DNA of 64,000 nucleotides from Octopus sinensis. Lineage: Eukaryota. The stretch lies in contig NC_043024.1 of NCBI RefSeq assembly GCF_006345805.1, forward strand, positions 2,232,001-2,296,000, written 5' to 3'. Below, one piece after another: positions 3,600-62,885 of this stretch; the first letter of the stretch is position 1, and every line of letters begins with the position of its first letter. The notes below the pieces were generated by a model, which was not told the DNA's origin, searched no databases, and saw nothing but the letters and a program-made list of their open reading frames with translations. A program made the translations under genes and the position numbers.

Positions 3600-4292
3600 T
3601 GTAGTTGTGGCCGAGGCCAGTGCCACCTGACTGGCTCCCCATACCGCTGGCACATAAAAAGCACCATCCAAGAGTGGTTGATGCCAAGCCAACCCCCTGT
3701 GCCAACTGGCTCCTGTGTTGGTGGCACATAAAAAGCACCATCCGAATGTGGCCAATGCCAGTGCCGCCTGACTGGCTCCTGTGCTGGTGGCATGCTATAA
3801 GCACCATTCATGCATGGGTCAATGCCAGAGCCACCTGACTGGCTCCCCGTGCCGTTGGCACCATCCAAATGTGATCAATGCCAAACCCCTGCCCTGACTG
3901 GCTCCTGTGCTGGTGGCACATAAAAAGCACCATCGGAACATGGCTGATGCCAGTACCACCTGACTGGCTCCCTGTGTCGTTGGCACATAAAAAGCACCAT
4001 CTGAATGTGGTCGATGCCAGCCCCCTGCTCTGACTTGCTCCTGTGCTGGGGGCACATAAAAAGCATCATACAAACGAGGCCGATGCCAGTGTCACCTGAC
4101 TGGTTCCCATACCGGTGACACGTAAAAGCACCCACTACACTCATGGAGTGGTTGGCGTTAGGAAGGGCATCCAGCTGTAGAAACATTGCCAGATCAGACT
4201 GGAGCCTAGTGCAGCCTCCTGGCTTCCCAGACCCTGGTCGAACCGTCCAACCCATGCTAGCATGGAAAAACGGACGTTAAACGATGATGATG
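3600..4292 (+). mobile_element. SINE-like family D with internal ~66-bp repeats and (GAT)n tail
   Basis: Core AGGAAGGGCATCCAGCTGTAGAA and 3' end CATGCTAGCATGGAAA..TTAAACGATGATGATG. Other copies: 118-530, 6620-6890, 12815-13015, 14370-14700, 31165-31560, 32816-33150, 33930-34250, 38010-38300, 43330-43625, 45255-45520, 50163-50575, 52000-52170, 61880-62135. Confidence 0.8.
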
Positions 4293-6290: not shown

Positions 6291-6887
6291 TCCTTATTCA
6301 GTGATCCCTCCCATTGTCCCTGGCACCTACAGACCTGCTTCTTTTCTTGTCATGGACCTCTGTCTCTCTCTCATTAGGTTTCTCTGAACAACAACTCTTT
6401 TACCTTTTTACTTGTTTCAGTCATTTGACTGCGGCCATGCTGGAGCACCGCCTTTTAGTCGAGCGAATCGACCCCCAGGACTTGTTCTTTGTAAGCCTAG
6501 TACTTATCCTATCGGTCTCTTTTGCCGAACCGCTAAGTAACGGGGGACATAAACACACCAGCATCGGTTGTGAAGCGATGTTGGTGGGGACAAACACAGA
6601 CACACAAACATATACACATCATCATCGTTTAATGTCCGTTTTCCGCGCTAGCACGGGTTGGATGGTTCGACCGGGGTCTGGGGAGCCAGGAGGCTGCACC
6701 AGGCTGCAGTCTGATCTGGCAGTGTTTCTACAGCTGGATGCCCTTCCTAACGCCAACCACTCCGCGAGTGCAGTGGGTGCTTTTTACGTGCCACCTGCAC
6801 AGGTGCCAGGGGAGTCTGGCAGCGGCCACGATCGGTGCTTTTAACGTGCCATCGGCATGGAAACCAGCCAAGGCGGGGCTGGCATAT

Positions 6888-9217: not shown

Positions 9218-11929
9218 AAGGCAGGGAACTGGCAGAACCATGAGCATGCCAGACAAAATGCTTTGCGGCATTTCGCCCGTCTTTACGTTCTGAGTTCAAA
9301 TTCCACCGAGGTCGACTTTGCCTTTCATCCTTTCAGGGTTGATAAATTAAGTACCAGTGAAACACTGGGGTCGAGGTAATCGACTAGTCCCCTCCCCTCA
9401 AATTTTAGGTCTTGTGCCTATAGTAGAAAGGATTATTATTATGACGATGATGATGAAGGAGGCAAGCTATTAGAATCATTAGCATGCTGGGTGATTAGCG
9501 GTATTTTGTTTGCCGCTACGTATTTCTTTACTACTAAACTTAGGGGCTAAACACAGAGAAGACAAACAAGGACAGACAAAGGGATTAAGTCGATTACATC
9601 GACCCCAGTACGTAACTGGTACTTAATTTACCGACCCCGAAAGGATGGAAGGCAAAGTCGACCTTAGTGGAATTTGAACTCAGAACTTAACGGCAGACGA
9701 AATACGGTTACGCATTTCGCCCGGCTTGTTAACGTTTCTGCCAGCTCACCGCCTTGTAGAATATATACAATCACATCTTCCAAATCTTGAAGCGATAAAA
9801 TAATGAATGATTAATTCAAAATGTGGAGGTGCCATGGTCCAGTGGTTAAGACAGTGGACTCGCTGTTGTAGGATTGCGGTTTCGATTCCTAGACCGGGCG
9901 ATGTGAGTCTTTATTGAGCAAAAACACCTAGAGCTCCATGAGGCTCCAGCAGGGGATGGTAAGTGCCTAATAAGTACCAGTTACGCTCTAGGGTCGATGT
10001 AATCGACTTAATCCCTTCCCCCAAATTGAGGGGCCTTGTGCCACCTGTAGAAAGAATTATGATGATGATGATGATGATGATGAATGGGGTTGTGGATTAG
10101 AAGAATTGTTGTTTTGCAGAATTTGTTCTTACTCTTTACATTCCTAGTTCAAATCTCACTGAAGTCGCAAGTTAAGATAAAATACCAGTAAGATACTGGG
10201 GGCCAGTATAAAAACACTGTTGTGTCACTACTTGTGCCACAAGACCTGATTTCTCATCATCCGTAATTGATTATGAGCTAACGAGAGAGCTCGTGTGTAG
10301 TCGGTTTGTCTGCTAGAAACAGCAGTCGGATCTCCCTCGAATCACTCTGCACTGTGAAGGGACACACTGGATGTGTACCTCTAGATAAACTATGCCTTCC
10401 TCTCTCTCCCTGCACGGAAGGAAATAAACATTGGAAAAGTACTGGATGGTCACAACTGGAGTGCCTTTGATCATGTATTTGCTTCAGCGGGGTGGGGGGT
10501 GGGGTGACCCGTGACTATGAAATAACTACTTCTTCGTTATCATCGTGATAGTTAACGATAATTATTGGCATTGTCAGCGTCTCTATTGACATCATTCATC
10601 ATTACCACTTCCGTCATCACTACTACCACCATCACCACCACCACTATCACTGCCATCATCACCATCACCATCATTACCACTACTGTCATCACCATCATCA
10701 TCGTCGTCGTCATCATTGCGCACACACCCACCACCACTCCTAATCATCATCACCATCACTACTATCATTGTTGTCACTAGCATCATCATCATCATTTTTG
10801 TTGTCATCATTCAACATCTTTGGTGTCATCATCCTCATCTTTGTCATCATCATTATCGTACATACACCCACCATCACTACCATCATCATCATCATCACCA
10901 CAACTGTCATCACCATTGTGATCATCATCATCGTCATCATCATCATCACTACATCATCATTGTTGTCGCTAGCATCATCATCTTTGCTGTCATCATCATC
11001 TTTGTCATCATCGTTATCACACATACACCCACCATCACCACCATCATCATCATCCCACCACCACCACCATCACCACCACCATCATCATCATCCCACCACC
11101 ATCACCACCACCACCATCACCACCACTACCATCACCACCATCATCATCATTGCTGTCATCATGACCATCATCACCACCACCACCATCATCATCATACCAC
11201 CACCATCACCACCACCATCATCATCATCCCATCACCATCATCACCACCACCATCACCACCACCACTACCACCACCACCATCATCTCACCACCACCACCAC
11301 CACCACCATCATCCCACCACCACCATCATATGATATTTTCCAGCAGAATATGGCAAAAAAAAGGGGCCTTATTGCAAGTGATAGATGTCAGCTGTCCCTA
11401 AACGACCAACAATTGATTTTTATCTCCAAAACATTATTATTTAAATGTAATCCTGCTTATTATCTTACAGACAAATGTAACACTCTGCGTGCGTGCGTGC
11501 ATATATGCGTGTGCATGCGTGCATCTGTGTGTGCGTGTGTCCCTCGCACCCCCCCTTCCCCTGCCATCTCTGTTTTCTAATCTCTAAGTGTCTTTGTATT
11601 CCTCCGAGATCTCCGTAGCTTGGTGCAGTTACGGAAAAAATCAATAGAATTATGTTCAGACTGCTATGACTCACGCATGCACACATACACACGGGCACAC
11701 TGACACACACACACATACACGGACACACTGACACACGCGGGCGTGCACACACACACTGATATGTACGAAAACTCGTAAGTGACATGTGCAGAATCACACA
11801 TTTGTCTAGCACACACATACGTCAATACACACGTACACACTTCTTAAATGTACAGTCACATGCATACGTGCATATATATATATTGATACATATACACACA
11901 TACACATCTGTACATGTATGTATACACAC

Positions 11930-13371: not shown

Positions 13372-14984
13372 TTAAAGCCATAGCTTTATTTTGGAACAGT
13401 CAATATCATTGAGTGATTGATTGTGCTTGCAGACCACTTAGAATAGATACAGCATTATTGGTGCCAAGCAGTAATGAAGAATGAACGAGATTTAGGTTAG
13501 TTAAAATATGTTAGTGACATATTTCACTCTGGGATAGAGAAAAAGGAGGCGTTGGGAGGAAGGCAGTGGATTGGGGTACGCTATGAATTTATTATATTAT
13601 TATAGTATTGTATACAAATTATATAATATTATATTGAACATCAAATGATTCATAGTATATATAAATTAGTAGAATATAAAATATTTATTTATGCATAAAA
13701 ATAGGGGTGGGGCGCTGAGGGTGTTATTTGGCCATGAGGTGGGGTTAAGAAGTTTGAGAACCTCTGCTGTTGATGAATGTTTCTCGTTTAAGGTCAAGAT
13801 TACTACCCAGTCCAGAAGTTGAACTGACTATCTCATGATTATAATTGTAGCCCAATGCATTAACCACTAGGCCATATACCTTCACACACACACACACACA
13901 CACACACACAGTGGTAAATACACTCCTCTTATATAAAGGGAAAAACTTCATCCATGGCTGTGTAGTTAGAAGTTTGCTTCCCAACCACATGGTTCTGGGT
14001 TCAGTCCCATTGCGTGGCAGCTTAGGTAAGTGTCTTCTGCTATAGCCTCGGACCGACCAAAGCATTGAAAGTGGATTTGGTAGATAGAAACTGATAAGAG
14101 CTTGTTGTGTATATACATACACAAGGTCGTATCAAAAAGTTCCCAGACTAGTTATGTTTAATAAAAAATAACTTATTTACCTAAGATAATCAAGATATAG
14201 GCATAGGAGTGACTGTGTGGTAAGTAGCTTGCTTACCAACCACATGATTCCGGGTTCAGTGCCACTATATGGCACCTTGGGCAAGTGTCTTCTACTATAG
14301 CCTCGGACCGACCAAAGCCTTGGAGTGGATTTGGTAGACGGAAACTGAAAGAAGCCTGTTGTATATATGTATCATCATCATCATCGTTTAACTTCTGTTC
14401 TCCATGCTGGCATGGGATGGACGGTTCGACTGGGGTCTGGGAAGCCAGGAGGCTGGACCAGGCTCCTGTCTGATCTGGCAATGTTTCTATGGCTGGATGC
14501 CCTTCCTAACGCCAACCACTCCGTGAGTGTAGTGGGTGTTTTTTACGTGCCAGGTAAGGCTGGCAACGGCCGCGATCGGTTGGTGCTTTTTACGGGCCAC
14601 CGGCATGGACGCCACATGGGGCGGCACTGGCAACGGCCACGTTCAGATGGTTCTTTATGTGCCACCGGCACTGGTATCACAACTGCAAATTCCATTGATT
14701 TTTTTAGTGATTTCCATTCTGATTTCACTTGCTTCAACAGGTCTTATGTATATATATATGTATGTGTGTCTGTGTTTGTCCCCCCAACATCGCTTGACAA
14801 TCGATGCTGGTGTGTTTACGTCCCCGTAACTTAGCGGTTCGGCAAAGAGACCGATAGAATAAAATACTAGGCTTACAAAGAATAAGTCCTGGGGTCGATA
14901 TGCTTGACTTAAGGCGGTGCTCCAGCATGGCCACAGTCAAATGACTGAAACAAATATAAGAAGACCAATATATGTTGGGGGGGG

Positions 14985-15033
<49 letters not shown>

Positions 15034-18000
15034 CATATACATATATACAACAGGCTTCTTTCAGTTTCCGTCTACCAAATCCACTCACAAGGCATTGGTC
15101 GGCCCAAGGCTATAGCAGAAGACACTTGCCCAAGGTGCCATGCAGTGGGACTGAACCCGGAACCATGTGGTTGGTTAGCAAGCTACTTACCACACAGCCA
15201 CTCCTGCGCCTATATGTATAAATGTGTGTTTTTGTATACATGTCAGGGAGTGGATGTATATGCATATTAGTGTGTCTGTGTATATGTATATTTATGAGTA
15301 TGTATGTACATATGTATGGGGGGGGGTATATATGTCAGGAAGTGGATGCATATGTTTATTAGTACGTGTGTGTGTGTGTGTGTGTGTGTCAGCACATTTG
15401 AGTGTGTGTGTATACATAACTGTCAGTGAATATGTCAGTGTGGGGGGGGTGTCTCTGTGGGGGAGATGCATACAAGATATAAGTGTCAATGACTCTGTGT
15501 GTATTTCTCTCTCTCACTCTCACTCACTTAACTTATACTCCTATGCACACACTCACTCACACTCACACTCATTAAGCTGGTGTCCCTTCCCTCTGCCCCC
15601 CCCCCTTGCAGCTGACTGACTGAGTTCACAACAATAGGGTGTTGATTAGCTGATGATGATGATGATGATGATGATGGTGATGGTGTGGGCATGAAGTGGG
15701 AACAATGGGTGTGTCATGTTGATGACAAAGCTGGTGGTGGAGGTGGTGGCAGCGGTGGGGAGGCCGGGGTGAGGGGGAGGAGATATTGTTAATGATGCTT
15801 ATGGTAGTGGTGGTGGTGGTAGTGGAGGTTATTGTCCTGGTTGGTGGTGGTGGTGGTGGTGGTGACGGTGGTGTAGGTGACGGTGGTGGTGGTGGTGGTG
15901 GTGGAGGTTATTGTCACTGTTGGTGGGTGGTGGCGGCGGTGATGGTGGTGGTGGTGTGGTGTGGTGGCGGTGGTCATGGTCATGGTGGGAGCAGGTTGTA
16001 GCTAAGGATATTGTTAGTGGTGCTTGTGGTGGTGACTGGAGGATGGTGGTGGTGGTAGTGGTGGCGAAGATGGTGAGGTGTGGGGGGGAAGCGTTGGGCC
16101 TGAGTGTTGGTTGGGAGGAGGAGGGGGGGGCGAATGTACAGGGGAGTTTCCTGATGTAGAAGGAATCTATGACTTGACCTAACTACCAGATATAAACAAC
16201 ACAGCCATTGTATATATGTGTGTATATATATGTGTGTGTGTGTGTGTGTGCTCATGTGATTAGAACAAGATGTGGTAGATTTATACAGTGTTCCCACTCT
16301 CTCACTCTCTCTCTCTTTTCTCCAGGGAGGTTTGGGTTGGTAGGGTGGGGGCCACAGGAACCTGTCATAAATTGCTAGAAAGTCTCTAACCTGGTTGTTG
16401 CCTCGCCAGCTGGAAATAGCAGCTAAGTCTTCTTCCTTTTAAAGGAAAAAGATAAAAAAAAAAGGAAGGATTCTTTTTGGATAATGCATTTCGTTTGAAA
16501 TGTTCCATGTTTGATTAAAAGACCTGGGTGGATGGTTGGGTGGGTGGGTGAAGATTTGGATCATAGGTCAACTGGATCAAGACTGACCTAGGGTTAAATA
16601 GCAACAATCCTCACTCTCTCTCTTTCACCTTCTCTCCCTCTCTTTCACCTTCCCTCCCTCTTTCTTCCCCTCACTTTCTCCCCCTCTCTCCTCCCTCTCT
16701 CTTTCTCCCCCATCTCTCTTTCTCCTCCCATCTCTCCTCCCTCATCTCTCATCCCCTCTCTCTTTCTCCCTCCCTCTCCTTCTCACCGCTCTTTTATTCT
16801 TTTAAAAAAAAATTAAGATCAGGGAGTATTTTGGAGTTAAAAAGAACTTCTTCATTGCCACTGAAGTTGCTAGAAATAGCAGCCATACCCCTCTCCACCA
16901 TCCATACTCTATCTCAAAATACAAAAAGCAACAAACAATACTGTCATGGTCATCATCCTCATCATCATAACAATCTCTTTTCCATCCTTGCAAATATCAG
17001 ACGCAATTTGTTGAGCAAGATCTTCTACAGCCCCATAATGCCTTCCCAGTTGCCAACTCTCACCTATTTCCAAATAAGGTCATATTTCCCCACGACCTGA
17101 CATGTTTTTATGGAATGACTGGAAATGAAGGACACCGTTTATATCATCATCATCATCATCATCATACTCTTTACTCTTTTACTTGTTTCAGTCATTTGAC
17201 TGCGGCCATGCTGGAGTACCACCTTTAGTCGAGCAAATCGACCCCGGGACTTATTCTTTGTAAGCCCAGTACTTATTCTATCGGTCTCTTTTTGCCGAAT
17301 CGCTAAGTGGCGGGAACGTAAACACACCAGCATCGGTTGTCAAGCGATGCTAGGGAGACAAACATACAAACACATACACACACACACATATATATATATA
17401 TACGACGGGCTTCTTTCAGTTTCCGTCTACCAAATTCACTCACAAGGCATTGGTCGGCCCAAGGCTATAGCAGAAGACACTTGCCCAAGGTGCCACGCAG
17501 TGGGACTGAACCCGGAACCATGTGGTTGGTAAACAAGCTACTTACCACACAGCCACTCCTGCACCTATTCATCATTTAATGTCCTCCTTTTGTGTTGCCA
17601 TGGATCGGGTGGTTCGACAGTGTCTCCGGGAGGTTATAGAAGAGATGAATCCAAACTACATGCAGTGGGATTGAACTTAGAATATTTCGGTTGTAAAATG
17701 GACTTCTTAACTCCAGATGTAGCTCTGTGGTTTCAGGTTCTGTCCCTCTGCTTGGCACCTTAGGCAAGTGTTGTCTATTATACTCCTGGACTGACTCATG
17801 CCTTGGGAGTGAATTCGTTAGACAGAAACTGTATGAAAGGCAGTGAGCTGGCAGACACCTTAGCGCGCCGGGTGAAATGCTTAGCGGTATTTTGTCTGCC
17901 GTTACGTTCTGAGTTCAAATTCCGCTGAGGTCGACTTTGCCTTTCATCCTTTTGGGGTCGATAATATAAAGTACCAGTTACGCACTGGGGTCGATATAAT

Positions 18001-20574: not shown

Positions 20575-21334
20575 GTAAGTGGGCCTTTTTTCTCATCATT
20601 GTATGTAACACTCTCTTAGGGGACTGAGAAAACCTAATTAATTTGATGGCAGGTCAAGTCCAGTGCGGCGAGCTGGCAGAAACGTTAGCACGCCGGGCGA
20701 AATGTGTAGCCATATTTCGTCTGAACCCAAGACCATATGCTTAGGAAGCCAGCTTCTTAACCACACAGCGATGCCTGAACCTAAACAGCAAGTCAACCAC
20801 GATGAAACACGAACTTGCAGTCTTCTTCTTCAAAGTTAGATGCCTTATCTATTAGAATATTTTTTTTTTTATTCAATTATGCATTTCAACTGAAAAGCTA
20901 TGGCCCAGGAAATAGTGCCAGGAATCAAACCTTAGACTACCTGGGTGAAAGCCAGGAATCCTTATTATTTTCCCCCGGAAAAACTGGCAGAAACGTTAGC
21001 ACACCGGGCAAGATGCTTAGCGGTATTTCATCTGCCGTTACTGGGGTCGATGTAATCGACTCAATTCCTTTGTCTGTCCTTGTTCGACCTCTCTGTGTTT
21101 AGCCCCTTGTGGATAGTAAAGAAATAGGTATTTCATCTGCCGTTACGTTCTGAGTTCAAATTCTGCCGAGGTCAACTTTACCTTTCATCCTTTTGGGGTC
21201 AATAAAATAAATACTAGTTGCGCACTGGGGTCGATGTAATTGACTCAATTCCTTTGTCCTTGTTTATCCCCTCTATGTTTAGCCGCTTGTGGGCAATAAG
21301 GAATAAAATTATTTTCCCCTTCTTTCTTTTGCAG

Positions 21335-21537
21335 TCAGAGCTTTCCTCTGATGTGAACCTCTACTCCACTGATTCACTCTCATCTGGTGCAACAACCAAC
21401 TCCAGCTGCCAAGATTTGGAAACTTTGGTGAAGGGCTGCCCCAACATGGAACATTTTGAACTCATTACACCCAACTTCTATTCAGTTTTCCATAAAGTTC
21501 TTGGAATGTGTACGAGGGAACAGAATTTCTATGCTTG
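21335..21537 (+). CDS. FBXL18: FBXL18-like exon (SELSS...LVKGCPNMEHFELITPNF...FYA)
   Basis: ttgcag| and TG|gtatgt; matches the recalled LLKNLPFLEHLELIGSNF segment. Confidence 0.88.
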
Positions 21538-21611
21538 GTATGTATTGCCTTTTTATATTTCTGTTTTAAAATATTTTAAACCCTTTTGTTATCATATAGT
21601 AGAAGACACCT

Positions 21612-21863
21612 TGTGAAAGGTAGGAGAGTCCAGTTTGCTGGACATTGTTGTAGAGCTGAAAAAGAGGTAATTTCTACTCTCCTCCTCTGGAAGCCATCTA
21701 CTCGCGATACCAGAGGGCACACACTCTCCTACCCTGATGTAATCTCCAGGGTTACAGGCATCCAGCAACAGGACCTCTGTAATGCTATGATGGACCGTGA
21801 AGTCTGGCGTAGCATGGTAAATTCCATTGTCTCGACCACGGTCGAACAATGATGATGATGATG
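21612..21863 (+). mobile_element. 5'-truncated RTE-clade LINE 3' end
   Basis: RRVQFAGHCCRAE..MDREVWRSMV followed by a (GAT)n tail; 11-bp TSD AGAAGACACCT (21601-21611, 21864-21874) inside a family C SINE. Confidence 0.85.
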
Positions 21864-29513: not shown

Positions 29514-31803
29514 TACTATTACTATTATTTACGTTCTGAGTTCAAATTCCGCCGAGGTCGACTTTGCCTTTCATCCTTTCGGGGTCGATAAATTAAGTAC
29601 CAGTTACGCACTGGGGTCGATGTTATCGACTTAATCCCTTTGTCTGTCCTGGTTTGTCCCCTCTATGTTTAGCCCCTTGTGGGTAGTAAAGAAATATAAT
29701 TATTATTATTATTATTATTATTTTTAGTATTATTATTGTTATTATTTTTAATTATTATCATTGTTTTTATTAATATTATTACTTTTATTATTTAAAAAGT
29801 ATATAAAAACAAAAACAATCATCAGCATCATCATCATCAACAACAACAACAACCACATCAAAAACAAACCCCCTTTTTCCCCCTGCCAAACCTTGAATTC
29901 TTGCTTCATGTGAAATTTTTTTTGGTCAAGCTTCCGCTGGAGACAAACCCTTCTCTTCGTTTCTCGGTATCCACCCCACCCCACCCCACCCCACCCCACC
30001 CCCCCACTAATTTGTCATAACATCCATTGTCACCTCTCACTGGTCTGGTCAGACTCTGGACAAAGACAAAAAAAAAAAAAAACCACAATAAACAACACCA
30101 AAAATACCCCCACCCCCACCCCACCCACCCATCCACCCAAAGAAAACCAAAACAGAAAATAAAATTTTTTTTTTTTAATTTCGTCCAAATGGTTCCATAA
30201 AGACTTGTATTATTATTATTATCATCATTATTATCATTATTATTATTATCATCATTATTATTATTATTATTTTTAAGGCGGCAAGCTAGCAGAATTGTTA
30301 GCACACCAGGCGAAATGTTCAGTGGCATTTTGTCTGCCTTTATGTTTTGAGTTCAAATGCTGCTGAGGTCGACTTTGCCTTTCATCCAATGGGAGTCGAT
30401 AAAATAAGTACCAGTTACACACTGGGGGTCGATGTGTCGACTGCCCCCCTCCCCCAAATTTCAGGCCTTGTGCCTATAGTCGAAAGGATTATTATTATTA
30501 TTAATATCAAGGCAGTGAGCTGGCAGAATAATTTACGTGGTTTCAATTCCCAGACCGGGCGTTGTGAGTGTTTATTGAGCGAAAACCCTAAAAGCTCCGC
30601 GAGGCTCCGGCAGGGGGTGGTGGCGATCCCTGCTGTACTCTTTCACCACAACTTTCTCTCACTCTTTCTTCTGTTGGCCTGCTCACTTAGCCAGCGGGGT
30701 GGCGTCATTCGAAGGCTAAAACAATGCGAAGCGCATTGTGACCAGCGATGTGTAGCAACATCTGATAGCCTGGTCTGTCACGGTCGAAATCTAAACCCGC
30801 TGGGCCTTGAGATATCTGCCCTTTATGCTCTTGTTTTATGATGCCGCTAAATGTCTGCTGAAACTGAAATTGCATTGAGGACAAGTCCTTTTAGCCATTT
30901 AAAAACCAGGCATAAAACAGTTGCATTCACTTTTGGTTCCGAACCACATGATTTCAGGTTCAATCCCACCATGAGGCTCCTTGGCCAAGTGTTTTCTACT
31001 ATAGCGCTGGGTTGGCCCCAGTGCTAAACTGGTATTTATTGTATTGACCCTGAAAGGATAAAAGTGAACTTTAGTGATATTTGAACTCAGGACGTGAAGC
31101 TGGAAGAATTGTTGTCAAGCATTTTATCTACCATGCCAATGATTCTGCTAGCTTGCAGCCTTCATCATCATCATCGTTTAGTGTCTGCTTTCCATGCTAG
31201 CATGGGTTGGACAGTTCAACTGGGGTCTGGGAAGCCAGAAGGCTGCACCAGGCCCTGTCTGATCTGGCAGTGTTTCTACAGCTGGATGCCCTTCCTAACA
31301 CCAACCACTCCGTGAGTGTAGTGGGTGCTTTTTACGTGCCACCTGCACAGGTGCCAGACGAGGCTGGCAAAGGGCCACGATCGGATGGTGCTTCTTACGT
31401 GCCACCTCACAGGTGCCAGACGAGGCTGGCAAACAGCCACGATCAGATGGTGCTTTTTACGTGCCACCGGCACAGGTGCCAGTCGGGGCGGCGCTGGCAA
31501 CGGCCACGTTTGGATGATTCTCTTACGTACCACCAGCACTGGTATCACAGCTGCAAAGCTGTGATACCAGTACGCAGCCTTCTTAATAATAATAATAATA
31601 ATAATAATAATCCTTTCTACTAAAGGCACAAGGCCTGAAATCTTAAGAAATTGAGCCCAGTATTCAACTGGTACATATTTCGTTGACTGATAGGATGAAT
31701 GGCAAAGTCTACCTTGGTGCCACTTAAAGTCAGAACATAAAACTGGAAAAAAATTTTTAAGCACTTTTCGTCTGGTATGTAAACAATTCAACCAGCTTAC
31801 CAC

Positions 31804-37565: not shown

Positions 37566-38302
37566 CCCAAAACACGTAAAAGATGTTGGTGTCCCCATAT
37601 AAATGTAATTGAAACTATAAACAATAATAAACCATAATATAATTAATTTGGCAAAATGAACGAAACGAAAATAACAGTAAGAAAATAATGCTTATTTTTG
37701 CATACGCCCACTTTATTTATATTTGAAAAAGTTTTCGCTTTCTTTTAATTGCAAAGTCTTTCTTTTATTCTTTTATTTGTTTCGGTCATTTGACTATGGC
37801 CATGCTGGAGCACTGCCTTTAGTCGAGCAAATCGACCCCAGGACTTATTCTTTGTAAGCCTAGTACTTATCCTATCGGTCACTCTTGCCGAACCGCTAGG
37901 TTACGGGGACGTAAACACACCAGCATCGGTTGTCAAGCGATGTTGGGGGGACTAACACAGACACACAAACATATACATACATACATACATACATATATAA
38001 TATAATATATCATCATCGTTTAACGTCCGCTTTCCATGCTAGCATGGGTTGGATGGTTCGACCGGGGTCTGGGAAGCCTTGAGGCTGCACCAGACTCCAG
38101 TCTGATCTGGCAGTGTTTTTACAGCTGGATCCCCTTCCTAACGCCAACCACTCCGTGAGTGTAGCAGGTGCTTTTTACGTGCCAGGGGATGCTGGCAACG
38201 GCCACGATCGGTTGGTGATTTTTACGTGCCACCACCACGGAAGTCAGTCAAGGTGGTGCTGGCATCGACCAAGTACGGATGGTGCTTTTACATGCCACCG
38301 TA

Positions 38303-38334
<32 letters not shown>

Positions 38335-38344
38335 TATATATATA

Positions 38345-38416
<72 letters not shown>

Positions 38417-39603
38417 GACGGGCTTCTTTCAGTTTCTGTCTACCAAATCCACTCACCAGGCTTTGGTCGGCCCGAGGCTATAGTAGAAGACACTTGCCCA
38501 AGGTGTCACACAGTGAAGCAAGGCAAATTTTCTATCATGGGGACACTGACTGAACATCTCGCTTTCTGAATTTAAGAAACCCCTGAATCAAGCGAATCCT
38601 TAGTCTCTTAACTCTGTGAGCCAAGCAAGGTTTGCATCATCTGCTTCCATTGAGGTAAGGGCCAGGCTGTTCCCGGGGGTTTCCATTTAATCCTGTATGG
38701 CATTCTCTCTTCTTTTAAATGCAATATATATTTAGCCAAAGATGTTACGTTGCATCTCTCTGGGTTCCTAAAAGAGTACCTGTGGTTATTTAGTCGAAGC
38801 TTAAAAGGGTCCTCCGTTGCCCTAACATGTTTCCACCTCCATTAAGAAAGAGGTTATGTGTTTCAAGCCAGCGTGTCTGGTGAGTCACCTCCATCACTAA
38901 GAGTAGTAATAGACTTGTAACCAATGGCAACTTTCTGACTAACCACATCCAACGACTACATGATATGTATGTATACGCATGTATATATGTAAGTATGTAT
39001 TTAGGTGTCTCAGTATGTATAAAGATAAGGCGGCAAACTGGCAGAATCGTTAGCACGCCGGGCCAAATACATAGCCGTATTTCGTCTGCTGTTACGTTCT
39101 GAGTTCAAATTCCATCGAGGTTGACTTTGCCTTTCATCCTTTCGGGGTCGATTAAATAAGTACCAGTTACGCACTTGGGTCGATATAATCGACTTAACCC
39201 ATTTGTCTGTCTTTGTCCTCTCTGCGTTTAGCCCCTTGTGGGTAGTAAAGAAATAGGTATTTCGTCTGCTGCTATGTTCTGAGTTTAAATTCTGCCGAGG
39301 TCGACTTTGCCTTTCATCCTTTCGGGGTTGATAAATTAAGTACCAGTTACGCACTGGGATAGATGTAATCGACTTAATCCGTTTGTTTGTCCTTGTTTGT
39401 CCTCTCTGTGTTTAGCCCCTTGTGGGTAGTAAAGAAATAGGTATGTATGAAGACGTAAACAAATATCTTTATTTTTGCAGGTATATTGATAAAGCTATTG
39501 TGTGCCATTGGGAACTTTGAAGAAAAATAGAAAAAAGAAAAAAAAGGAAAAAATCCTGCTTTGGGAATTATTTCAGAGGAACGCATCATAAAAGCTAAAA
39601 GAA

Positions 39604-40572
39604 ATGTCTGACAAGGAACCTAGTGAAGAGGTGGAATCAGAATCAGAATCTAATGAAAATCTTGAATCAGAATCTGCGGATGGTCAGGGATTAAAGATCA
39701 CTGAAAATGCAGAATCTAGATCGAACCAAAAACCCGAAACACAACCAGAAGAGGACCTTGATACGGAGTTTGAAACAACGCTAGAAACGTTAGAAGAAGA
39801 AACCGAAACTGAAGAGGAAGCAAAACAAAAACCAAAAAAAGGGACAAAAAAAGCAAAAAATGGAGCGAAAATGGAAGCAAAACGAAATGGGAGGACAAAG
39901 GCAAAACCACAAGACACGGAAACGGATTCAAAATCAGGTTCGGAAACGGAATCAAAATCAGAAATGGGAACAGAATCAAAATCAGAAATGGAAACAGAAT
40001 CAAAATCAGAAGTGGAAACAAAGGCAAAGCCAAAAGTGGAAAAGGAATTGAAAACCGAACCAAAACCTCAAAAGGAATCCAAAAAAGACACAAAAGCCGT
40101 AACTTCTAAACGTTACTTGGTATCCGGCATAAACCACCCGTACTGTGATATTATATACCACCGGAAGACTAATGATTGCCTCCCGTGCAATTACTCACCT
40201 CACTGTCACTTCCAGCATTCTCATCGCTTCATGTTCACCGACTGTCCCCACTATGACAATTTCCACTGTTCGTGGTTGCCCCACGATTGCTTCCCTTGTT
40301 ACGATGTCATATACGAACGGTTCTCCCACGATTGTCTCCCCTGTCACGACGCCCTGCACAACCTAATCACCAAATATCATCACCCGTGCCATGACCTACC
40401 CTGCGATTACTCATACTGCTGCCACCACCACAACCCCCCCAAGCACCACCACCATCACCACCACCACCACCACCACGACCACCACTGCCACGACCACCAC
40501 TGCCACAACCACCACCATCATCATCATCATCATCCACATCACCATCACCACTGCTATTGCCATCATTGGTGA
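39604..40572 (+). CDS. Uncharacterised 322-aa protein: Glu/Lys/Ser-rich N-terminal half, His/Cys-rich repeat C-terminal half
   Basis: 969-nt ORF that is mostly not simple repeat. There is an upstream acceptor (tttatttttgcag| at 39480), an in-frame stop upstream, A at -3 of the ATG, and a candidate 5'-UTR exon donor TCTG|gtgagt at 38879/38880. Confidence 0.7.
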   Translation: MSDKEPSEEVESESESNENLESESADGQGLKITENAESRSNQKPETQPEEDLDTEFETTLETLEEETETEEEAKQKPKKGTKKAKNGAKMEAKRNGRTKAKPQDTETDSKSGSETESKSEMGTESKSEMETESKSEVETKAKPKVEKELKTEPKPQKESKKDTKAVTSKRYLVSGINHPYCDIIYHRKTNDCLPCNYSPHCHFQHSHRFMFTDCPHYDNFHCSWLPHDCFPCYDVIYERFSHDCLPCHDALHNLITKYHHPCHDLPCDYSYCCHHHNPPKHHHHHHHHHHHDHHCHDHHCHNHHHHHHHHPHHHHHCYCHHW

Positions 40573-41899: not shown

Positions 41900-42200
41900 A
41901 TGTTCCTTCAGGAACATTGTGCGCTCTAGGACTAACTTATATTTTGCATTTGCGGCTCCGTTGGTGGCTAATGAGCCCTGCTCTTGACAAGCATACACGA
42001 CTGCAAACATTGCAGACCAAGCTTTCCCCATTCACTATACGAGCCGTGCGCTTTCGCGCAGCTCGCTTAAGTTCTTCATGCTGGATACGTGCTCTCTCAA
42101 AAGTGTCGATCCCCTCCTTAACCTGATTCCTCCATCTGTGGCGATGACAGGCATTGTTCTCCCAGTCAGTGTCCTGCATATCAAAGGCCTTTAATGTCTA
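41900..42200 (-). mobile_element. RTE-type LINE 3' fragment with terminal zinc-knuckle-like motif
   Basis: FERARIQHEELKRAARK..CNVCSRVCLSRAGLISHQR followed by a short (GAT)n tail. Confidence 0.7.
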
Positions 42201-44109
42201 GATAAGTGCATGTATACATACATGCACACACATGTAGTCTGTGTGTGTGAATATGCATGAATGTTGATTTCCTAGTTTTCCTTGTTACCTGAGCACAGGT
42301 GAAATCTCGTTTATATTACTTGTTGACATGATGAGCAATCCCTCTGTACTTTTGAAAACCTGTAGAATCCAACCCATGCAAGCACATACACACACAAAAG
42401 AAAGAAAGAAGAATGTTAAGCAAACAGATGAACATTTAATTACATTTTCACAAGAATAATTATAATTTAACTTTTTAGCTTTCAGTTTAAAAATGTAATG
42501 CTTATTTATTCACATTGTTTTGACTTAATTTGTGGAGGCACATGGCCTAGTGGTTAAAGCAGCGGATTTGCAGTTGAGGGATTGTGGGTTCGAATCTCAG
42601 ACTGGGCGATGTGTGTGCTTATGAGCGAAACACCTAAGCTCCACGCGGCTCCGGCAGAAGTTAATGGCGAACTTCTGCTGACTCTTTCACCACAATTTTC
42701 TCTCACTCTTTCCTCCTGCATCTTGCAGCTCACCTGCGTCCCGTCCAGGTGGGGAACCAATACGCCAAGGAAACCGGGAAACCGGCCCTAATGAGCCAGG
42801 CATGGCTTGAGAAAGAACAAACAAATCATGTATTATCATCTCGTAGCTTTAGATTTCAAAGATATCATCAGCATCATCATCATCATTTAGCATCCATTTT
42901 CCATGTGTTGGATGGTTTGACTGGAATTGGTAAGCTGGAGAGCTGCACCAGGCTCCAGTCTACCTTGGCTCGGTTTCTACAGCCAACGACTTCACAAAGT
43001 GTACCAAGGGTCTTTAATGTGTCACCAGCACACATTGCAGGGTGAGTATGAGATGCCAGATCTGGCTGGTTTAAGTACCAAAGGATCGAACTGTAGGAGT
43101 ATTTCTACAAGCTGAGTATTCCTACGATAAATTCATCATTGTTTATCATCCATTTTCCATGCTGGCATGGGTTGGACGGTTTGACAGGAGCTGGCCAGGC
43201 TCCAATTGTCTGTTTTGGCATGGTTTCTATGGCTGGATGCCCTTTTTAATGCCAACCACTTTACAGAGCGTGCTCTGGTGCTTATTACGTGCCACTGGCA
43301 CGGGTGCATTCACACAGCACCAGAGCACATCATCGTTTAACGTCCGTTTTCCATGCTTGCATGGGTTGGACGGTTCAACTGGGGTCTGGGAAGCCAGGAG
43401 GCTGCACCAGGCTCCAATCTGATCTGGCAATGTTTCTATGGCTGGATGCCCTTCCTAACGCCAACCACTCCGTGAGTGTAGTGGGTGCTTTTTACGTGCC
43501 ACCAGCACAGGTACCAGGCGAGGCTGGCAACGGCCACGATCAGATGGTGCTTTTTACGTGCCACCGGCACGGAAGTCAGTCTAGGCGGTGCTGGCAACGG
43601 CCACGTTCGGATGGTGCTTGTGGTGCTGGGACCTGTAAAAGACAAGCCTTTATGTATGGATGACAGCGATTTTATTTAGATTGACCTGTCTTTTCAAGTA
43701 CAGCAAATCATAACTCCTGGTCCCTAGTTATTTCCTTAATGAGGCCTAGTGTCCAAAGACCCTACAATAAATTCATGTTAAGTTTCTTTCTTTTAATAAA
43801 AGGAACACACAGTGCAATCATATATTTTATTGAAATGTAGAATTTTAAGTACAAAGTATATAGAAATTTTATAATTGGATAAAAATGACGTCTCTTGAAT
43901 TTTTTATAATAAATTTAAAAAACTCAGTCAATTAGCGAATTTATAAAAAAAAACAACTAAGGGAGTTAACTTGCATGCGAGTTACGTCCCTTTCGAATCT
44001 ATTCATTTGTGACACATTTTGTACAAAGGTGTATATATATGAATTTGGTTTTGGGATTTGGTTTGCAAGATTCTTTATGTGAGTTCGTGTGTTGAAGTTC
44101 TGTTGAGAT

Positions 44110-47768: not shown

Positions 47769-49028
47769 TTACCAGCACAATACAAAACTAACCAATAAAT
47801 ACAACTGTAAGCTAAGAATTAACCAAAAAGTCCAATTTCCATTTTCATTAAAATTCTCATAAACACCCGTAAGAAAAGCAAAAAGGATCATGAACCGCAA
47901 GAATATTTTAACGAGTCCAACCTTTTTCTTTCTCTTTTTCATTCTTGGAAATATTTCAACTTTTTCAGTTTCAAAATAAGGATAACCAAAAAAGGCACCA
48001 AAAAATGGTTGAAATTTAAAACGCCATGTTTGGTGGAATTTAATTTTCTTAACCTTAAACGACCGACGATGAAGACTTTCCTGTTCCGCTTCGATTCGGC
48101 TGAAGAATTTTGAAAATTCATGCATCGTTGGAAAATTCGTTTCTTCATCTTTCATTTGCTCAAAGACTTTGCTTCCTCGTTCGATACTTTTGTAACAGTT
48201 CTGCAATTTGGAATGATGTCGGTCAAGCTCGTGTATAAGCTGACTCTGCCACAGATTCACCTTTTTCACCTGTTCGTTGACGGACGCCTGCACCTCGTAG
48301 AGAAACTGGTCGCGACTGTCGTAGATTTTACTTAGAACTTCATCACGAGAAGTCGTTATCTGGTTTTTCACCAGGTCAAGCTTCAAAAGCTGTAACTCAA
48401 TTTGGTCCTTAATAACTTCGAGATACTCAAACTCTTTTTCGGTAAGTTCTTTGAATGTACTCAGCATTTCTTTGAGCGGTTTAGTCTTGTGCCGATAATG
48501 AGATTTGTAATAACACTGTAGGCAAATATCCTTAGTACAGGTGACACAGAACACCTGTAGATATTCCCCGCTATGCAAGGGGCATTCTGCTTCAGGTGGT
48601 TCCTTAGGATCAGGATAATTAACTTGAATAGGTATGAGTATGTTCTCAATGGAATCCATGTGTAAAGTCAGGTTGTGCTTGGTCGCACACCAGCTGCACA
48701 AATCCATGTCGCACTTGCTGCAGTTGTACTTGGCTAAACGGCTGTCTTTCGTGCAGGAGTCACAGAGCTTCTGTTCAAAAGATGTGGTGATTTCTTCTTT
48801 GAGAGAATTAATTAGAAAATTGGCGGGAAAGTCTTGAGATGTCGAAATATTTGCCCGACACTGCGGACACTGTATCAAGCGCATGGACGAAGCATTTTTC
48901 AGCTGTTGCAGGCACTCATAGCAAATAGAATGTAGACAGGGCAGCAGCCTGGGGTCTTCATACTCGTCAAGGCAGACGGGGCAACTCAGGAGACGCTCTC
49001 GAACCCGGCGCAGTTTCAGATTTTCCAT
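47769..49028 (-). CDS. TRIM/RBCC E3 ligase (RING, two B-boxes, coiled coil, C-terminal hydrophobic segments), 419 aa, single coding exon
   Basis: C3HC4 RING CPVC..CLHSICYEC..CPQC; B-box1 CDSC..CSKC..CSWC..H; B-box2 CPLH..FCVTC..ICLQC..H..H; coiled coil; tail KKRKKK followed by two hydrophobic stretches. An acceptor ttttttacag|A sits directly before the ATG at 49028, so the track's first 8 residues are intronic. Confidence 0.92.
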   Translation of the reverse strand: MENLKLRRVRERLLSCPVCLDEYEDPRLLPCLHSICYECLQQLKNASSMRLIQCPQCRANISTSQDFPANFLINSLKEEITTSFEQKLCDSCTKDSRLAKYNCSKCDMDLCSWCATKHNLTLHMDSIENILIPIQVNYPDPKEPPEAECPLHSGEYLQVFCVTCTKDICLQCYYKSHYRHKTKPLKEMLSTFKELTEKEFEYLEVIKDQIELQLLKLDLVKNQITTSRDEVLSKIYDSRDQFLYEVQASVNEQVKKVNLWQSQLIHELDRHHSKLQNCYKSIERGSKVFEQMKDEETNFPTMHEFSKFFSRIEAEQESLHRRSFKVKKIKFHQTWRFKFQPFFGAFFGYPYFETEKVEIFPRMKKRKKKVGLVKIFLRFMILFAFLTGVYENFNENGNWTFWLILSLQLYLLVSFVLCW

Positions 49029-49553: not shown

Positions 49554-50029
49554 TTCTTTTGTGCAATACTGTTTCTAAAAGCCCATCACATAAGGCTATA
49601 AATATTGGTATCAAATTTTGGCAACAATTACAGTGGAGGGGTCAAGATGATTATATGGTCCCCAGTGCTCAACAGGTACTTATATTATTGACCCTGAAGG
49701 GACGAAAGGCAAAGTCGACCTCAATGGAATTTGAACTCTAATCGTTGAGAGGACGTTGGTATCATCATCGTCTTCTTCTTCTTCTCATTATTATTATTAT
49801 TATTATATTATTATTATCATTATTATTATTATTATGTGTTTTTACTCAATAAACACTCACAATGCCCAGTCTGGGTATCGAAACCGCGTTCTTACGACCG
49901 TGAGTCTGCTGCCCTAACCACTGGGCCATTGTGCCTCCAAGGACGTTATTATATAATAATAATAATACTTTCTATTATGGGCACAAGGCCTAAATTTGGG
50001 AGGAGGGGGATAGTTGATTACATTATATA

Positions 50030-50074
<45 letters not shown>

Positions 50075-50601
50075 CCAGTGCGTAACTGGTACTAATTTTA
50101 TCAATCCCGAAAGGATGAAAGGCAAAGTCGATCTCGGCGAAATCAATAATAATATTAATAATCATCATCATCATCGTTTAACGTCCGTTTTCCATGCTAG
50201 CCTGGGTTGGACGGTTCAACTGGGGTCTGGGAAGCCAGGAGGCTTCGTCAGGCCCCAGTCTGATCTGGCAGTGTTTCTACAGCTGGATGCCCTTCCTAAT
50301 GCCAACCACTCCGTGAGTGTAGTGGGTGCTTTTTATGTGCCACCTGCACAATTGCCAGACGAGGCTGGCAGATGGCCACGGCCAGATGGTGCTTTTTATG
50401 TGCCACCTGCACAGGTGCCAGACGAGGCTGGCAGACGGCCACGGCCGGATGGTGCTTTTTAGATGCAACCGGCACGGGGGCCAGTTGGGACGGCGCTGGC
50501 AACGGCCTCGCTCGGTTGGTTCTCTTACGTGCCACCGGCACTGGTATCACAGCTACAATTTCCATTGATGTTGATCGATTTTATTTCATTTTCATTTTTT
50601 C

Positions 50602-62469: not shown

Positions 62470-62885
62470 CTATTATACAATCATCATTGTTCGACCGTGG
62501 TCGAGACAATGGAATTTACCATGCTCCGCCAGACTTCACGGTCCATCATAGCATTACGGAGGTCCTGTTGCTGGATGCCTGTAACCCTGGAGATTACATC
62601 AGGGTAGGAGAGTGTGCGCCCTCTGGTATCGCGAGCAGATGGCTTCCAGAGGAGAAGAGTAGAAATTGCCTCGTTTTCAGCTCTACAACAATGTCCAGCA
62701 AACTGGACTCTTCTACCTTTCACAAGAGATGACACAGGTGGTAGTTTCCCATATATTTGTACTTTGATTGGATGGCGCTTCCACAAGAGATTTTGAGCTC
62801 TCATAAGGAGGCGAGTGTAATGTCCAGGTTTCTGAGCCATATAGTAGAATTGGTTCTACTATATGGCTGTTATACGAGCAGCGTC
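62470..62885 (-). mobile_element. Longer fragment of the same RTE-clade LINE
   Basis: Track ORF 62484-62840 is nearly identical to 21612-21852; lies in TOMM7 intron 2. Confidence 0.85.

What the first reader, a model, noticed from the sequence alone, without database searches (positions are those of the whole stretch)
39604..40572. Unrecognised bipartite protein with 15-residue His/Cys repeats and a poly-His tail
Residues 1-177 contain no His or Cys and are Glu/Lys/Ser/Thr-rich with 8-aa repeats (ETESKSEM). The last 145 residues contain about 50 His and 18 Cys, with 15-aa units (TDCPHYDNFHCSWLP, HDCFPCYDVIYERFS, HDCLPCHDALHNLIT, KYHHPCHDLPCDYSY) sharing a D-C-x-P-C-x-D pattern. There is no signal peptide. 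It is a candidate lineage-specific metal-binding or cross-linking structural protein (for example Zn/Cu storage, or sperm/cytoskeletal), unlike the Gly/His-rich beak proteins or metallothioneins as I recall them (inference).
Basis: partly seen in the sequence, partly recalled or inferred. Interest (0 to 1): 0.75.

Follow-up and report, generated by a model that had tools for sequence, protein, structure and literature searches.

The report
Orphan octopod His/Cys-rich protein gene candidate
A 322-codon open reading frame in an octopus-like genome encodes a protein with no known relatives whose back half is one-third histidine plus cysteine; it is probably a fast-evolving, octopod-only, metal-binding protein, but expression is unproven and it could still be a repeat-built pseudo-ORF.

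Summary
Window 39604-40572 (+) is an uninterrupted ATG-to-stop ORF of 322 codons. Residues 1-177 contain no His or Cys and are rich in E, K, S and T. Residues 178-322 contain 50 His and 18 Cys.

The ORF is open well beyond chance: the two non-repetitive segments are open in the same frame at P about 0.008 and 0.004. It is not a transposon, and an in-frame stop lies five codons before the ATG.

It matches no Pfam family, no PDB sequence, and nothing real among 1.84 billion representative proteins.

The one comparative lead comes from Argonauta hians. There, at the same place and orientation relative to the neighbouring TRIM56-like gene, a 106-aa ORF has the same layout. Its similarity exceeds composition alone (shuffle p about 0.001-0.01), although BLASTP gives only E = 0.4.

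Best reading, at about 0.45: a real, rapidly evolving, Octopoda-restricted intracellular protein. A disordered acidic/basic N-half precedes a C-half that chelates Zn, Cu or Ni through H-x-C-x-P-C-H units and a poly-His tail.

Main rival, at about 0.3: a non-functional ORF assembled from a 24-bp minisatellite and a decayed (CAY)n microsatellite.

The parts
39604..40572 (+). Complete ORF, ATG to TGA, 322 codons. An in-frame TAA lies five codons upstream of the ATG, so no upstream coding exon can join in this frame through the 39481 acceptor.
39604..40134 (+). N-terminal half (residues 1-177). It has no His or Cys and a pI of 4.8. Acidic Ser/Thr/Glu blocks alternate with Lys-rich blocks (residues 76-102, net +10), and there are 17 S/T-x-x-D/E sites. 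Predicted disordered.
39918..40042 (+). In-frame 24-bp (8-codon) tandem repeat encoding (T/M)E T E S K S E-type units.
40135..40425 (+). Non-repetitive His/Cys/Tyr/Pro/Asp-rich core (residues 178-274). It carries three C-x-P-C motifs (192, 229, 244), five P-C dipeptides, and the HPYCDIIYH and CSWLPHDC motifs that are shared with the Argonauta ORF.
40422..40551 (+). (CAC/CAT)n-derived tract. It encodes the poly-His tail (residues 275-322: 34 His and 4 Cys in 48 residues).
39481..39603 (+). Putative 5' UTR segment between a strong splice-acceptor consensus (T-rich tract followed by CAG|G at 39478-39481) and the ATG. It contains no upstream ATG. The base at -3 of the start codon is G.
   Evidence: consensus only, no transcript
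38880..39480 (+). Putative 5' UTR intron, from GTGAGT at 38880 to CAG at 39480. It is filled by one tRNA-derived SINE copy plus a partial tandem duplicate (39030-39444).
   Evidence: inferred, not verified

Best explanation
This is a genuine, fast-evolving, single-coding-exon gene restricted to octopods, and it encodes an intracellular bipartite protein.

The N-half is an intrinsically disordered polyampholyte. Acidic Ser/Thr clusters that look like CK2 substrates alternate with Lys-rich stretches that look like a nuclear localisation signal.

The C-half is a dense array of soft and borderline metal ligands: three H/N-D-C-x-P-C(-H-D) units, further P-C and H-x-C sites, and a roughly 48-residue poly-His tail interrupted by Cys. 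It would chelate several Zn2+, Cu+/2+ or Ni2+ ions per chain, so the protein would act as a metal buffer, store or chaperone.

The C-half probably grew out of, and still expands and contracts through, the (CAY)n tract and 15-codon unit duplications.

Shown: the ORF itself, its composition, its excess openness, its uniqueness, the absence of known relatives, and a positional counterpart in Argonauta.

Inferred: expression, splicing, cellular location, metal binding and biological role.
For: ORF integrity:
- There are 0 stops in frame, against 7 and 17 in the other forward frames and 11-23 on the reverse strand.
- Two independent non-repetitive segments are open in the same frame, P = 0.008 and 0.004 by dinucleotide shuffle.
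- Under a position-specific null, the whole ORF gives P about 5e-10.

Start context:
- An in-frame stop lies five codons before the ATG. There is a purine at -3 and no upstream ATG after the acceptor.
- The acceptor consensus sits 123 nt upstream, while only 21 such sites occur on this strand in 64 kb.

Coding-type divergence between internal units:
- Residues 178-195 and 230-247 share 10 of 18 residues, 4 of them through synonymous codon differences.
- Differences by codon position are 6/4/11.

Not a repeat or transposon: the ORF DNA is unique in the window and in the fetched loci apart from the (CAC)n tail, and it has no Pfam hit.

Positional counterpart in Argonauta hians:
- L001 16660-16977 (-) lies 5.7 kb beyond the 3' end of the TRIM56-like orthologue, on the opposite strand. 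In the window the gap is 7.2 kb in the same convergent arrangement.
- The layout and motif order match: an S/E/K-rich N-part, then HPYx[DE]IIY[HQ] exactly at the junction, then CSWxxHxC, P-C dipeptides, a His run and a Cys/Tyr end.
- The similarity exceeds composition-preserving shuffles: z = 3.5-4.4 and p = 0.0007-0.004 for Argonauta residues 28-64, and p = 0.006-0.01 with the His run removed.
- Everything else between the two loci has diverged beyond alignment except transposons and the TRIM gene.

Ligand density: 50 His and 18 Cys in 145 residues, with C-x-x-C flanked by His. It is established chemistry that such clusters bind Zn, Cu and Ni.
Against: - No transcript, peptide or annotation evidence was obtainable.
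- No relative was found among proteins of 75-563 aa in the 5.8-billion collection. This is despite a species whose TRIM neighbour is 92% identical being represented there.
- The Argonauta match is not significant by BLAST (E = 0.4), was not reported by tblastn, is three times shorter, and is not an annotated gene in that assembly. I chose the sub-regions used in the shuffle test after seeing the match.
- About 27% of the ORF is tandem repeat that stays open in all frames.
- The His/Cys core is NNY-codon rich: 50% of its codons are within one change of CAY, against 34% expected. Under a composition-aware null its openness is therefore only P about 0.02.
- Poly-His mechanical ORFs are common in these genomes, for example window 10716-11580 and several in L001.
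- AlphaFold gives no confident fold (mean pLDDT 41.8).
Confidence: 0.45

Rival explanations
1. This is not a functional gene. It is a long ORF that arose and persists passively, because the locus is a patchwork of an A/G-rich 24-bp minisatellite, purine-rich low-complexity DNA and an old, partly decayed (CAY)n microsatellite. In all of these, stop codons are rare in this frame. It may at most be a proto-gene.
For: - The repeat segments are open in all three frames.
- The His/Cys core has pyrimidine-dominated third positions and an excess of CAY-neighbour codons, so it is open with P of only about 0.02 under a composition-aware null.
- The window and the Argonauta locus hold several other 60-270-aa His-rich ORFs that are plainly microsatellite artefacts.
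- There is no homologue in any database searched and no confident fold.
- At a per-kilobase chance of about 1e-4, a genome of gigabase size would hold many such ORFs.
Against: - Two compositionally different non-repeat segments are both open in the same frame, while the other five frames are closed.
- In the C-terminal half, 28 TAY/TGY codons (and 2 TGG) sit one change from a stop, and none has become one.
- Synonymous differences occur at conserved motif residues.
- There is a clean start context and a nearby acceptor.
- An ATG-initiated ORF with the same layout and motif order survives at the syntenic site in Argonauta, where neutral DNA is no longer alignable.
Confidence: 0.3
2. This is a real gene, but its product is a structural protein hardened by cross-links rather than a metal buffer. 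It would be an intracellular matrix protein whose Pro-Cys, Tyr and His residues form disulfide (and possibly metal-bridged) networks. The analogy is with keratin-associated proteins of hair and with the Cys/Pro-rich sperm-tail and mitochondrial-capsule proteins of animals. Such a gene would probably be germline-expressed and fast-evolving.
For: - Recurrent x-P-C dipeptides: five in octopus and four in Argonauta.
- High Tyr, Trp and Pro alongside Cys in both species.
- No signal peptide.
- A single coding exon, strong length variation between lineages and no relatives elsewhere. From general knowledge, these features are typical of male-germline structural genes.
Against: - No Pfam hit to keratin-associated or sperm Cys-rich families.
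- Cys is only 12% of the C-half, while His is 34%. That composition is more typical of metal chelation than of disulfide matrices.
- No expression data of any kind.
Confidence: 0.15
3. This is part of something already known: a transposon-encoded protein, a terminal exon of a larger conventional gene, or a degenerate zinc-finger gene.
For: The region is packed with SINEs and LINE fragments, including a LINE-type C2H2 tail at 41940-42179 (-). Octopus genomes are known for large zinc-finger expansions (general knowledge).
Against: - The ORF DNA and protein are single-copy in the window and absent from the other loci.
- No Pfam domain is found at E up to 10, zinc fingers included.
- In-frame stops lie between the acceptor at 39481 and the ATG, so no upstream coding exon can join this frame there.
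- No terminal repeats bound the ORF, apart from simple (TA)n tracts.
Confidence: 0.04

Closest known systems
Molluscan/cephalopod metallothioneins (alpha-beta1 bidomain MTs, e.g. NpoMT1, ObiMT1)
   Same: They are cytosolic, have no signal peptide, are rich in metal ligands and are presumed to buffer d10 metals. Cephalopods accumulate Cd, Cu and Zn (PMC9781358).
   Different: MTs are about 72 aa and about 29% Cys, arranged in CxC motifs, with essentially no His or aromatic residues. Here the C-half is 12% Cys and 34% His with 10 Tyr, has only one CxC and three C-x-P-C motifs, and carries a 177-aa acidic/basic N-half. There is no sequence relation.
Squid histidine-rich beak proteins and suckerins
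   Same: They are cephalopod-restricted, low-complexity and His-rich.
   Different: Those proteins are secreted, Gly/Ala/His-rich and Cys-poor, lie in tandem gene clusters, and are reported only from decapodiforms, not from O. bimaculoides (PMC9068888). This ORF has no signal peptide, little Gly, many Cys, and no paralogue in 64 kb.
Bacterial His-rich metal-storage proteins (Hpn/Hpn-like type) and His-rich tails of metallochaperones
   Same: The working principle I propose is the same: long His runs interspersed with Cys pairs bind several Ni or Zn ions per chain. This comparison rests on recall, not on a test.
   Different: They are unrelated in sequence and origin. Nothing was retrieved from 1.84 billion mostly microbial representatives, nor from the genome or metagenome scans. 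Those proteins are short and lack an acidic/basic N-domain.
Keratin-associated proteins and sperm Cys/Pro-rich structural proteins (SMCP, ODF1, Drosophila Mst84D/87F type)
   Same: They are intracellular, have no signal peptide, carry repeated short Pro-Cys units, evolve fast and vary in length. This comparison also rests on recall.
   Different: There is no Pfam match. Those families are far richer in Cys and poor in His, and they have no poly-His tail.
Argonauta hians unannotated ORF, GCA_054771915.1 BAAFZT010000043.1 (L001 16660-16977, minus strand)
   Same: It has the same convergent position next to the TRIM56-like gene and the same order of parts: an S/E/K-rich N-part, the HPYx[DE]IIY[HQ] junction motif, CSWxxHxC, P-C dipeptides, a His run and a Cys/Tyr-rich end.
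   Different: It is 106 aa rather than 322. It has an (EK)n tract in place of the long acidic/basic half, one unit where octopus has several, and a His run of 10. BLASTP gives E = 0.4 and there is no DNA-level alignment.

Membership tests
Protein-coding gene (generic criteria) | The reading frame is open beyond what composition allows, and it is the only open frame. | tested here: met
   0 stops in frame, against 7 and 17 in the other forward frames and 11-23 on the reverse strand. Shuffle P = 0.008 and 0.004 for the two non-repeat segments, and the whole ORF gives 5e-10 under a position-specific null. The core alone gives only 0.02.
Protein-coding gene (generic criteria) | The ORF is conserved in related species. 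| tested here: inconclusive
   The syntenic Argonauta ORF shares the layout and motifs, with shuffle p of 0.0007-0.01. However, BLASTP gives E = 0.4. No counterpart was found for the species whose TRIM is 92% identical.
Protein-coding gene (generic criteria) | The locus is transcribed, spliced and translated. | not testable with these tools
   Only consensus signals are available: GTGAGT at 38880, a T-rich tract with CAG|G at 39481, G at -3, and ATTAAA/AATAAA at 41166 and 41401.
Metallothionein | Small size (60-75 aa), about 30% Cys in CxC/CxxC arrays, and His and aromatic residues rare. | tested here: not met
   The protein has 322 aa. Its C-half is 12% Cys and 34% His with 10 Tyr, one CxC and three CxxC. 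No Pfam MT family matches. Reference values are from PMC9781358.
Squid His-rich beak proteins / suckerins | A secretory signal peptide, Gly/Ala/His-rich modules, and clustered paralogues. | tested here: not met
   There is no hydrophobic N-terminus, the whole protein has only 8 Gly, and no paralogue lies in the window. The family is reported absent from octopus (PMC9068888).
Known zinc-finger or other Cys/His domains (C2H2, RING, CHORD, CHY, zf-HIT and others in Pfam) | A match to the family profile. | tested here: not met
   There were 0 Pfam families at E up to 10 for the whole protein and for either half, and 0 PDB sequences at E up to 10.
Keratin-associated / sperm Cys-Pro-rich structural proteins | A match to the family profile, with high Cys in CCxP-type pentapeptides. 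| tested here: not met
   There is no Pfam hit, only one CC pair, and five P-C dipeptides.
Transposable-element protein | Multiple genomic copies, terminal repeats, or transposase, RT or Gag domains. | tested here: not met
   The sequence is single-copy apart from the (CAC)n tail. No domains were found. The only flanking inverted repeats are (TA)n tracts.
Metal-binding protein (functional class, not a homology family) | Stoichiometric binding of Zn, Cu or Ni by the C-half. | not testable with these tools
   This is inferred from ligand density only: 50 His and 18 Cys in 145 aa, with H-x-C-x-x-C-H units.

The most novel reading that the evidence does not exclude
An Octopoda-specific metal-buffering protein family, unrelated to metallothioneins. 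Its ligand-rich domain would have been born de novo from a (CAY)n microsatellite and enlarged by 15-codon unit duplication. It would have been kept by selection for over 100 million years at a fixed locus next to a TRIM56-like gene, while its sequence and length turned over almost completely. This would be a traceable example of gene birth from simple-sequence DNA. It would also be a candidate for the unidentified 'metallothionein-like' metal-binding fraction of cephalopod tissues.
Probability: 0.2. Interest if true: 0.65.

Novelty: new variant of a known kind. Interest (0 to 1): 0.4.

Why it matters
Cephalopods concentrate Cu, Zn, Cd and Ag to unusual levels, and part of that metal is bound by poorly defined 'metallothionein-like' proteins. 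If this ORF is real, it would be a cytosolic protein with about 68 His/Cys ligands per chain and no relation to metallothionein, which would make it a concrete and testable candidate for that role.

The octopus-Argonauta pair would also show a gene keeping its place, orientation and architecture while its sequence turns over through micro- and minisatellite dynamics. That bears on how lineage-specific genes arise.

If it is not real, it is a useful warning. Repeat-rich octopod DNA can generate 300-codon ORFs with protein-like motifs.

Tried and rejected
- Pfam on the whole protein and each half returned nothing at E up to 10.
- A PDB sequence search of the core returned nothing.
- The word-indexed search of 5.8 billion proteins was run twice, on the full protein scored over residues 165-285 and on a stand-alone 136-aa piece. 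Both returned nothing.
- The exhaustive HMMER search against 1.84 billion representatives gave one hit, P0001. It is a GLNRPYCEA repeat protein that matches only 'GINHPYCD', so I rejected it as spurious.
- The exact sequence is absent from the 15-billion collection. So is the neighbouring TRIM protein: it was looked up only as the TTG-start reading, and the homology search with the ATG-start version found nothing above 92% identity. The species itself is therefore not represented and this negative is uninformative.
- Scans of metagenome and prokaryotic genome contigs produced pattern hits only, with no relatives.
- Rfam returned only low-complexity miRNA-like noise in microsatellites.
- No tRNA was called in the SINE.
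- AlphaFold from the single sequence gave pLDDT 41.8, so I did not run a fold search.
- A raw Smith-Waterman ranking of Argonauta ORFs placed the syntenic ORF first, but a poly-His/Tyr microsatellite ORF scored nearly as high. I therefore rejected raw scores and replaced them with composition-preserving shuffles.
- The locus L005 around a 39%-identical TRIM paralogue holds no His/Cys ORF and is uninformative.
- tblastx and blastn between the window and the Argonauta locus align only SINEs, other repeats and the TRIM gene.
- A degenerate C2H2 finger reading (C244-x2-C247-x12-H260) was considered and dropped, because the spacing fits one unit only and Pfam finds nothing.
- A literature search found no description of such a protein. 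The SRR accessions of the related species appear in no paper.

Full report
**What is there**

The window is repeat-rich animal DNA of octopod type.
- A tRNA-derived SINE head occurs 9 times where 0 are expected.
- Microsatellites are abundant.
- The one clear conventional gene is a RING plus B-box TRIM56-like gene at 47772-49028 (-). Its product is 92% identical to proteins on Logan contigs from SRR11869385/90/91 and 70% identical to an Argonauta hians protein.

- Residues 1-177 have no His or Cys and are E/K/S/T-rich, with a pI of 4.8. Acidic Ser/Thr blocks alternate with a Lys-rich block at residues 76-102.
- Residues 178-322 hold 50 His and 18 Cys.
- The 8-residue repeats are an in-frame 24-bp minisatellite at 39918-40042, and the His tail is a (CAC/CAT)n tract at 40422-40551.
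- Between them, residues 178-274 are non-repetitive at the DNA level. They carry three C-x-P-C motifs, five P-C dipeptides and loosely 15-residue units.
- There is no signal peptide or hydrophobic segment.

**Is it more than chance?**

The ORF is the second-longest open frame in the window, after the TRIM gene. The other five frames are closed, with 7-23 stops.

Dinucleotide-preserving shuffles leave the non-repetitive N segment open with P = 0.008 and the complex middle segment with P = 0.004, in the same frame. The two tandem-repeat segments are open in every frame and say nothing.

A harsher null keeps codon-position composition.
- It gives 5e-10 for the whole ORF.
- It gives only about 0.02 for the His/Cys core. 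That core is built mostly of NNY codons, and half of them lie within one change of CAY.

Other observations point the same way.
- The C-terminal half has 28 TAY/TGY codons (plus 2 TGG) one step from a stop, and none has become one.
- The two best-matching internal units share 10 of 18 residues, four of them through synonymous codons. Their differences fall 6/4/11 over codon positions 1/2/3, which is a coding-type pattern, though on small numbers.
- An in-frame stop lies five codons before the ATG, so the CDS is self-contained.
- A strong acceptor consensus, one of only 21 on this strand in 64 kb, lies 123 nt upstream with no intervening ATG. These are consensus matches, not evidence of splicing.

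**What it is not**

- It has no Pfam family at E up to 10 and no PDB sequence match.
- It has no relative in two word-indexed searches of 5.8 billion proteins.
- The exhaustive HMMER search of 1.84 billion representatives returned only one spurious repeat-protein hit.
- Nothing turned up in metagenome or prokaryotic genome contigs.
- The DNA is single-copy in the window and in the fetched loci apart from the (CAC)n tail, and no terminal repeats bound it, so it is not a transposon.
- It is not a metallothionein. Cephalopod MTs are about 72 aa and about 29% Cys, arranged in CxC arrays (PMC9781358), whereas this protein has one CxC and is dominated by His.
- It is not a His-rich beak protein or suckerin. 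Those are secreted, Gly-rich, clustered, and reported absent from octopus (PMC9068888).

**Limits of the negatives**

The neighbouring TRIM protein of this species is also absent from the collection. The source species and the annotated Octopus proteomes are therefore evidently not searchable here. I cannot exclude that the ORF is already catalogued somewhere as an uncharacterised protein.

A species with a 92%-identical TRIM is represented by short Logan contigs. No counterpart of the target was found there, which is a weak negative. Repeats would break such assemblies, and expression may be tissue-specific.

**The comparative lead**

I fetched the Argonauta hians locus around the TRIM orthologue (L001). 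The intergenic DNA no longer aligns with the window except for SINEs and other repeats.

At 16660-16977 on the strand opposite to TRIM, 5.7 kb beyond its 3' end, lies an ATG-initiated 106-aa ORF. In the window the corresponding gap is 7.2 kb, in the same convergent arrangement. The Argonauta ORF reads MSSTSTSSSKAVEKKKEKEKEKEKEKEEEISKPSHPYREIIYQHYAPPCCSWGCHGCYWPCGWYHHHHHHHHHHRHCCHRTHFLLPCVPYYHYHYCDPCCTGCYYC.

Its order of parts matches the octopus ORF:
- an S/E/K-rich low-complexity start;
- HPYx[DE]IIY[HQ] exactly where His and Cys begin (octopus HPYCDIIYH);
- CSWxxHxC (octopus CSWLPHDC);
- P-C dipeptides, a His run, and a Cys/Tyr-rich end.

How strong is the similarity?
- BLASTP scores it E = 0.4 and tblastn did not list it.
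- Raw alignment scores are inflated by composition.
- Composition-preserving shuffles of the Argonauta sequence give z = 3.5-4.4 (p = 0.0007-0.004) for the stretch before the His run, and p = 0.006-0.01 with the His run removed. I chose those sub-regions after seeing the match.

Taken together with position, strand and motif order, I regard orthology as likely but unproven. If it holds, an ORF has been kept at this site since the Argonauta-Octopus split while neutral DNA was randomised, which argues for function. The three-fold length difference would reflect gain and loss of repeat units.

**How it most likely works (inferred)**

The C-half offers about 68 His/Cys side chains in 145 residues, including H/N-D-C-x-P-C(-H-D) units that place up to four ligands within seven residues, plus a Cys-interrupted poly-His tail. 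This is the chemistry of multi-ion Zn, Cu or Ni chelation.

AlphaFold predicts no stable fold (pLDDT 41.8). That is expected for a metal-dependent or disordered protein, but it is also uninformative.

The N-half looks like a phospho-regulated polyampholyte with an NLS-like Lys block. This resemblance is recalled, not tested.

I therefore put the alternatives as follows.
- An intracellular metal buffer or chaperone: 0.45.
- A disulfide or metal cross-linked intracellular structural protein, with the Pro-Cys motifs and fast evolution as in germline structural proteins: 0.15.
- A non-functional repeat-derived ORF: 0.30.
- A transposon, a known family or part of a larger gene: 0.04.

**Novelty and verdict**

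Lineage-restricted low-complexity genes are common in cephalopods; 1,597 D. pealeii genes have similarity only to cephalopod genes (PMC9068888). His/Cys-rich metal binders are also a known kind of protein.

This one has no detectable family and an unusual bipartite design, and it may illustrate the growth of a coding domain out of a (CAY)n tract. It deserves a cheap follow-up: RNA-seq mapping, tBLASTn and synteny across octopods, and metal-binding assays.

I rate interest as moderate at 0.4. Expression and function remain untested, and the pseudo-ORF reading is still alive.

Noticed in passing
window 47772-49028 (-); the mechanical ORF runs to 49052: A single-exon TRIM56-like gene with RING, B-box and coiled-coil regions and a hydrophobic C-terminal tail. 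Its product is 92% identical to proteins on Logan contigs from SRR11869385/90/91 and 70% identical to an Argonauta hians protein. It lies convergent with the His/Cys ORF.
   Followed up: yes
L001 9699-9986 (+), upstream of the annotated Argonauta TRIM56-like gene at 10001-10933: The NCBI Argonauta model (310 aa, B-box only) appears truncated. The RING-encoding part matches the window gene at 76% over 96 aa just upstream of the annotated start.
   Followed up: partly
window 39030-39444, with further copies at 7710, 9719, 20673, 20984, 32629, 47623, 55045 and 60168: A tRNA-derived SINE whose head is CTGGCAGAAYCGTTAGCACGCCGGGC. There are 9 copies in 64 kb where 0 are expected. One full copy plus a partial tandem duplicate sit in the putative 5' UTR intron of the ORF, and another copy lies just 3' of the TRIM gene, where the related species' contig has none.
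   Followed up: partly
window 228-695, 3875-4255, 6314-6844, 14367-14834, 31207-31623, 38011-38553, 43289-43663 and 49836-50462; also many sites in L001: A second abundant interspersed repeat. Its mechanical translation reads ...FLQLDALPNANHS.SVVGAFYVPP.... It is shared between the window and Argonauta at 70-90% DNA identity. It produces 110-200-aa ORFs that are not genes.
   Followed up: no
window 10716-11580 (+), and L001 9076-9769 and 11433-12074: (CAC/CAT/ATC)n microsatellite blocks that give 200-270-aa poly-His, poly-Thr or poly-Ile ORFs open in several frames. They are a useful negative control, showing that poly-His ORFs alone are common artefacts in these genomes.
   Followed up: partly
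window 41937-42179 (-) and 62484-62840 (-): Fragments that look like C-terminal parts of LINE-type retrotransposon ORFs. The first has a C2H2 zf-met hit at E = 9e-4. The second has no Pfam hit, and I recognised it only by eye.
   Followed up: partly
window 21218-21616 (+): A 132-aa ORF with a weak, sub-threshold match to the FBXL18 leucine-rich-repeat region (E = 0.0014, 17.6 bits against a cutoff of 27). It may be an exon of an F-box/LRR gene.
   Followed up: no
L001 16978-17800 (upstream of the Argonauta ORF, minus strand): A minisatellite of roughly 30-60-nt units (actagccaccggataccaaaatatatag...) runs right up to about 40 nt before the ATG of the Argonauta His/Cys ORF. Its meaning for that ORF's promoter or 5' UTR is unknown.
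   Followed up: no
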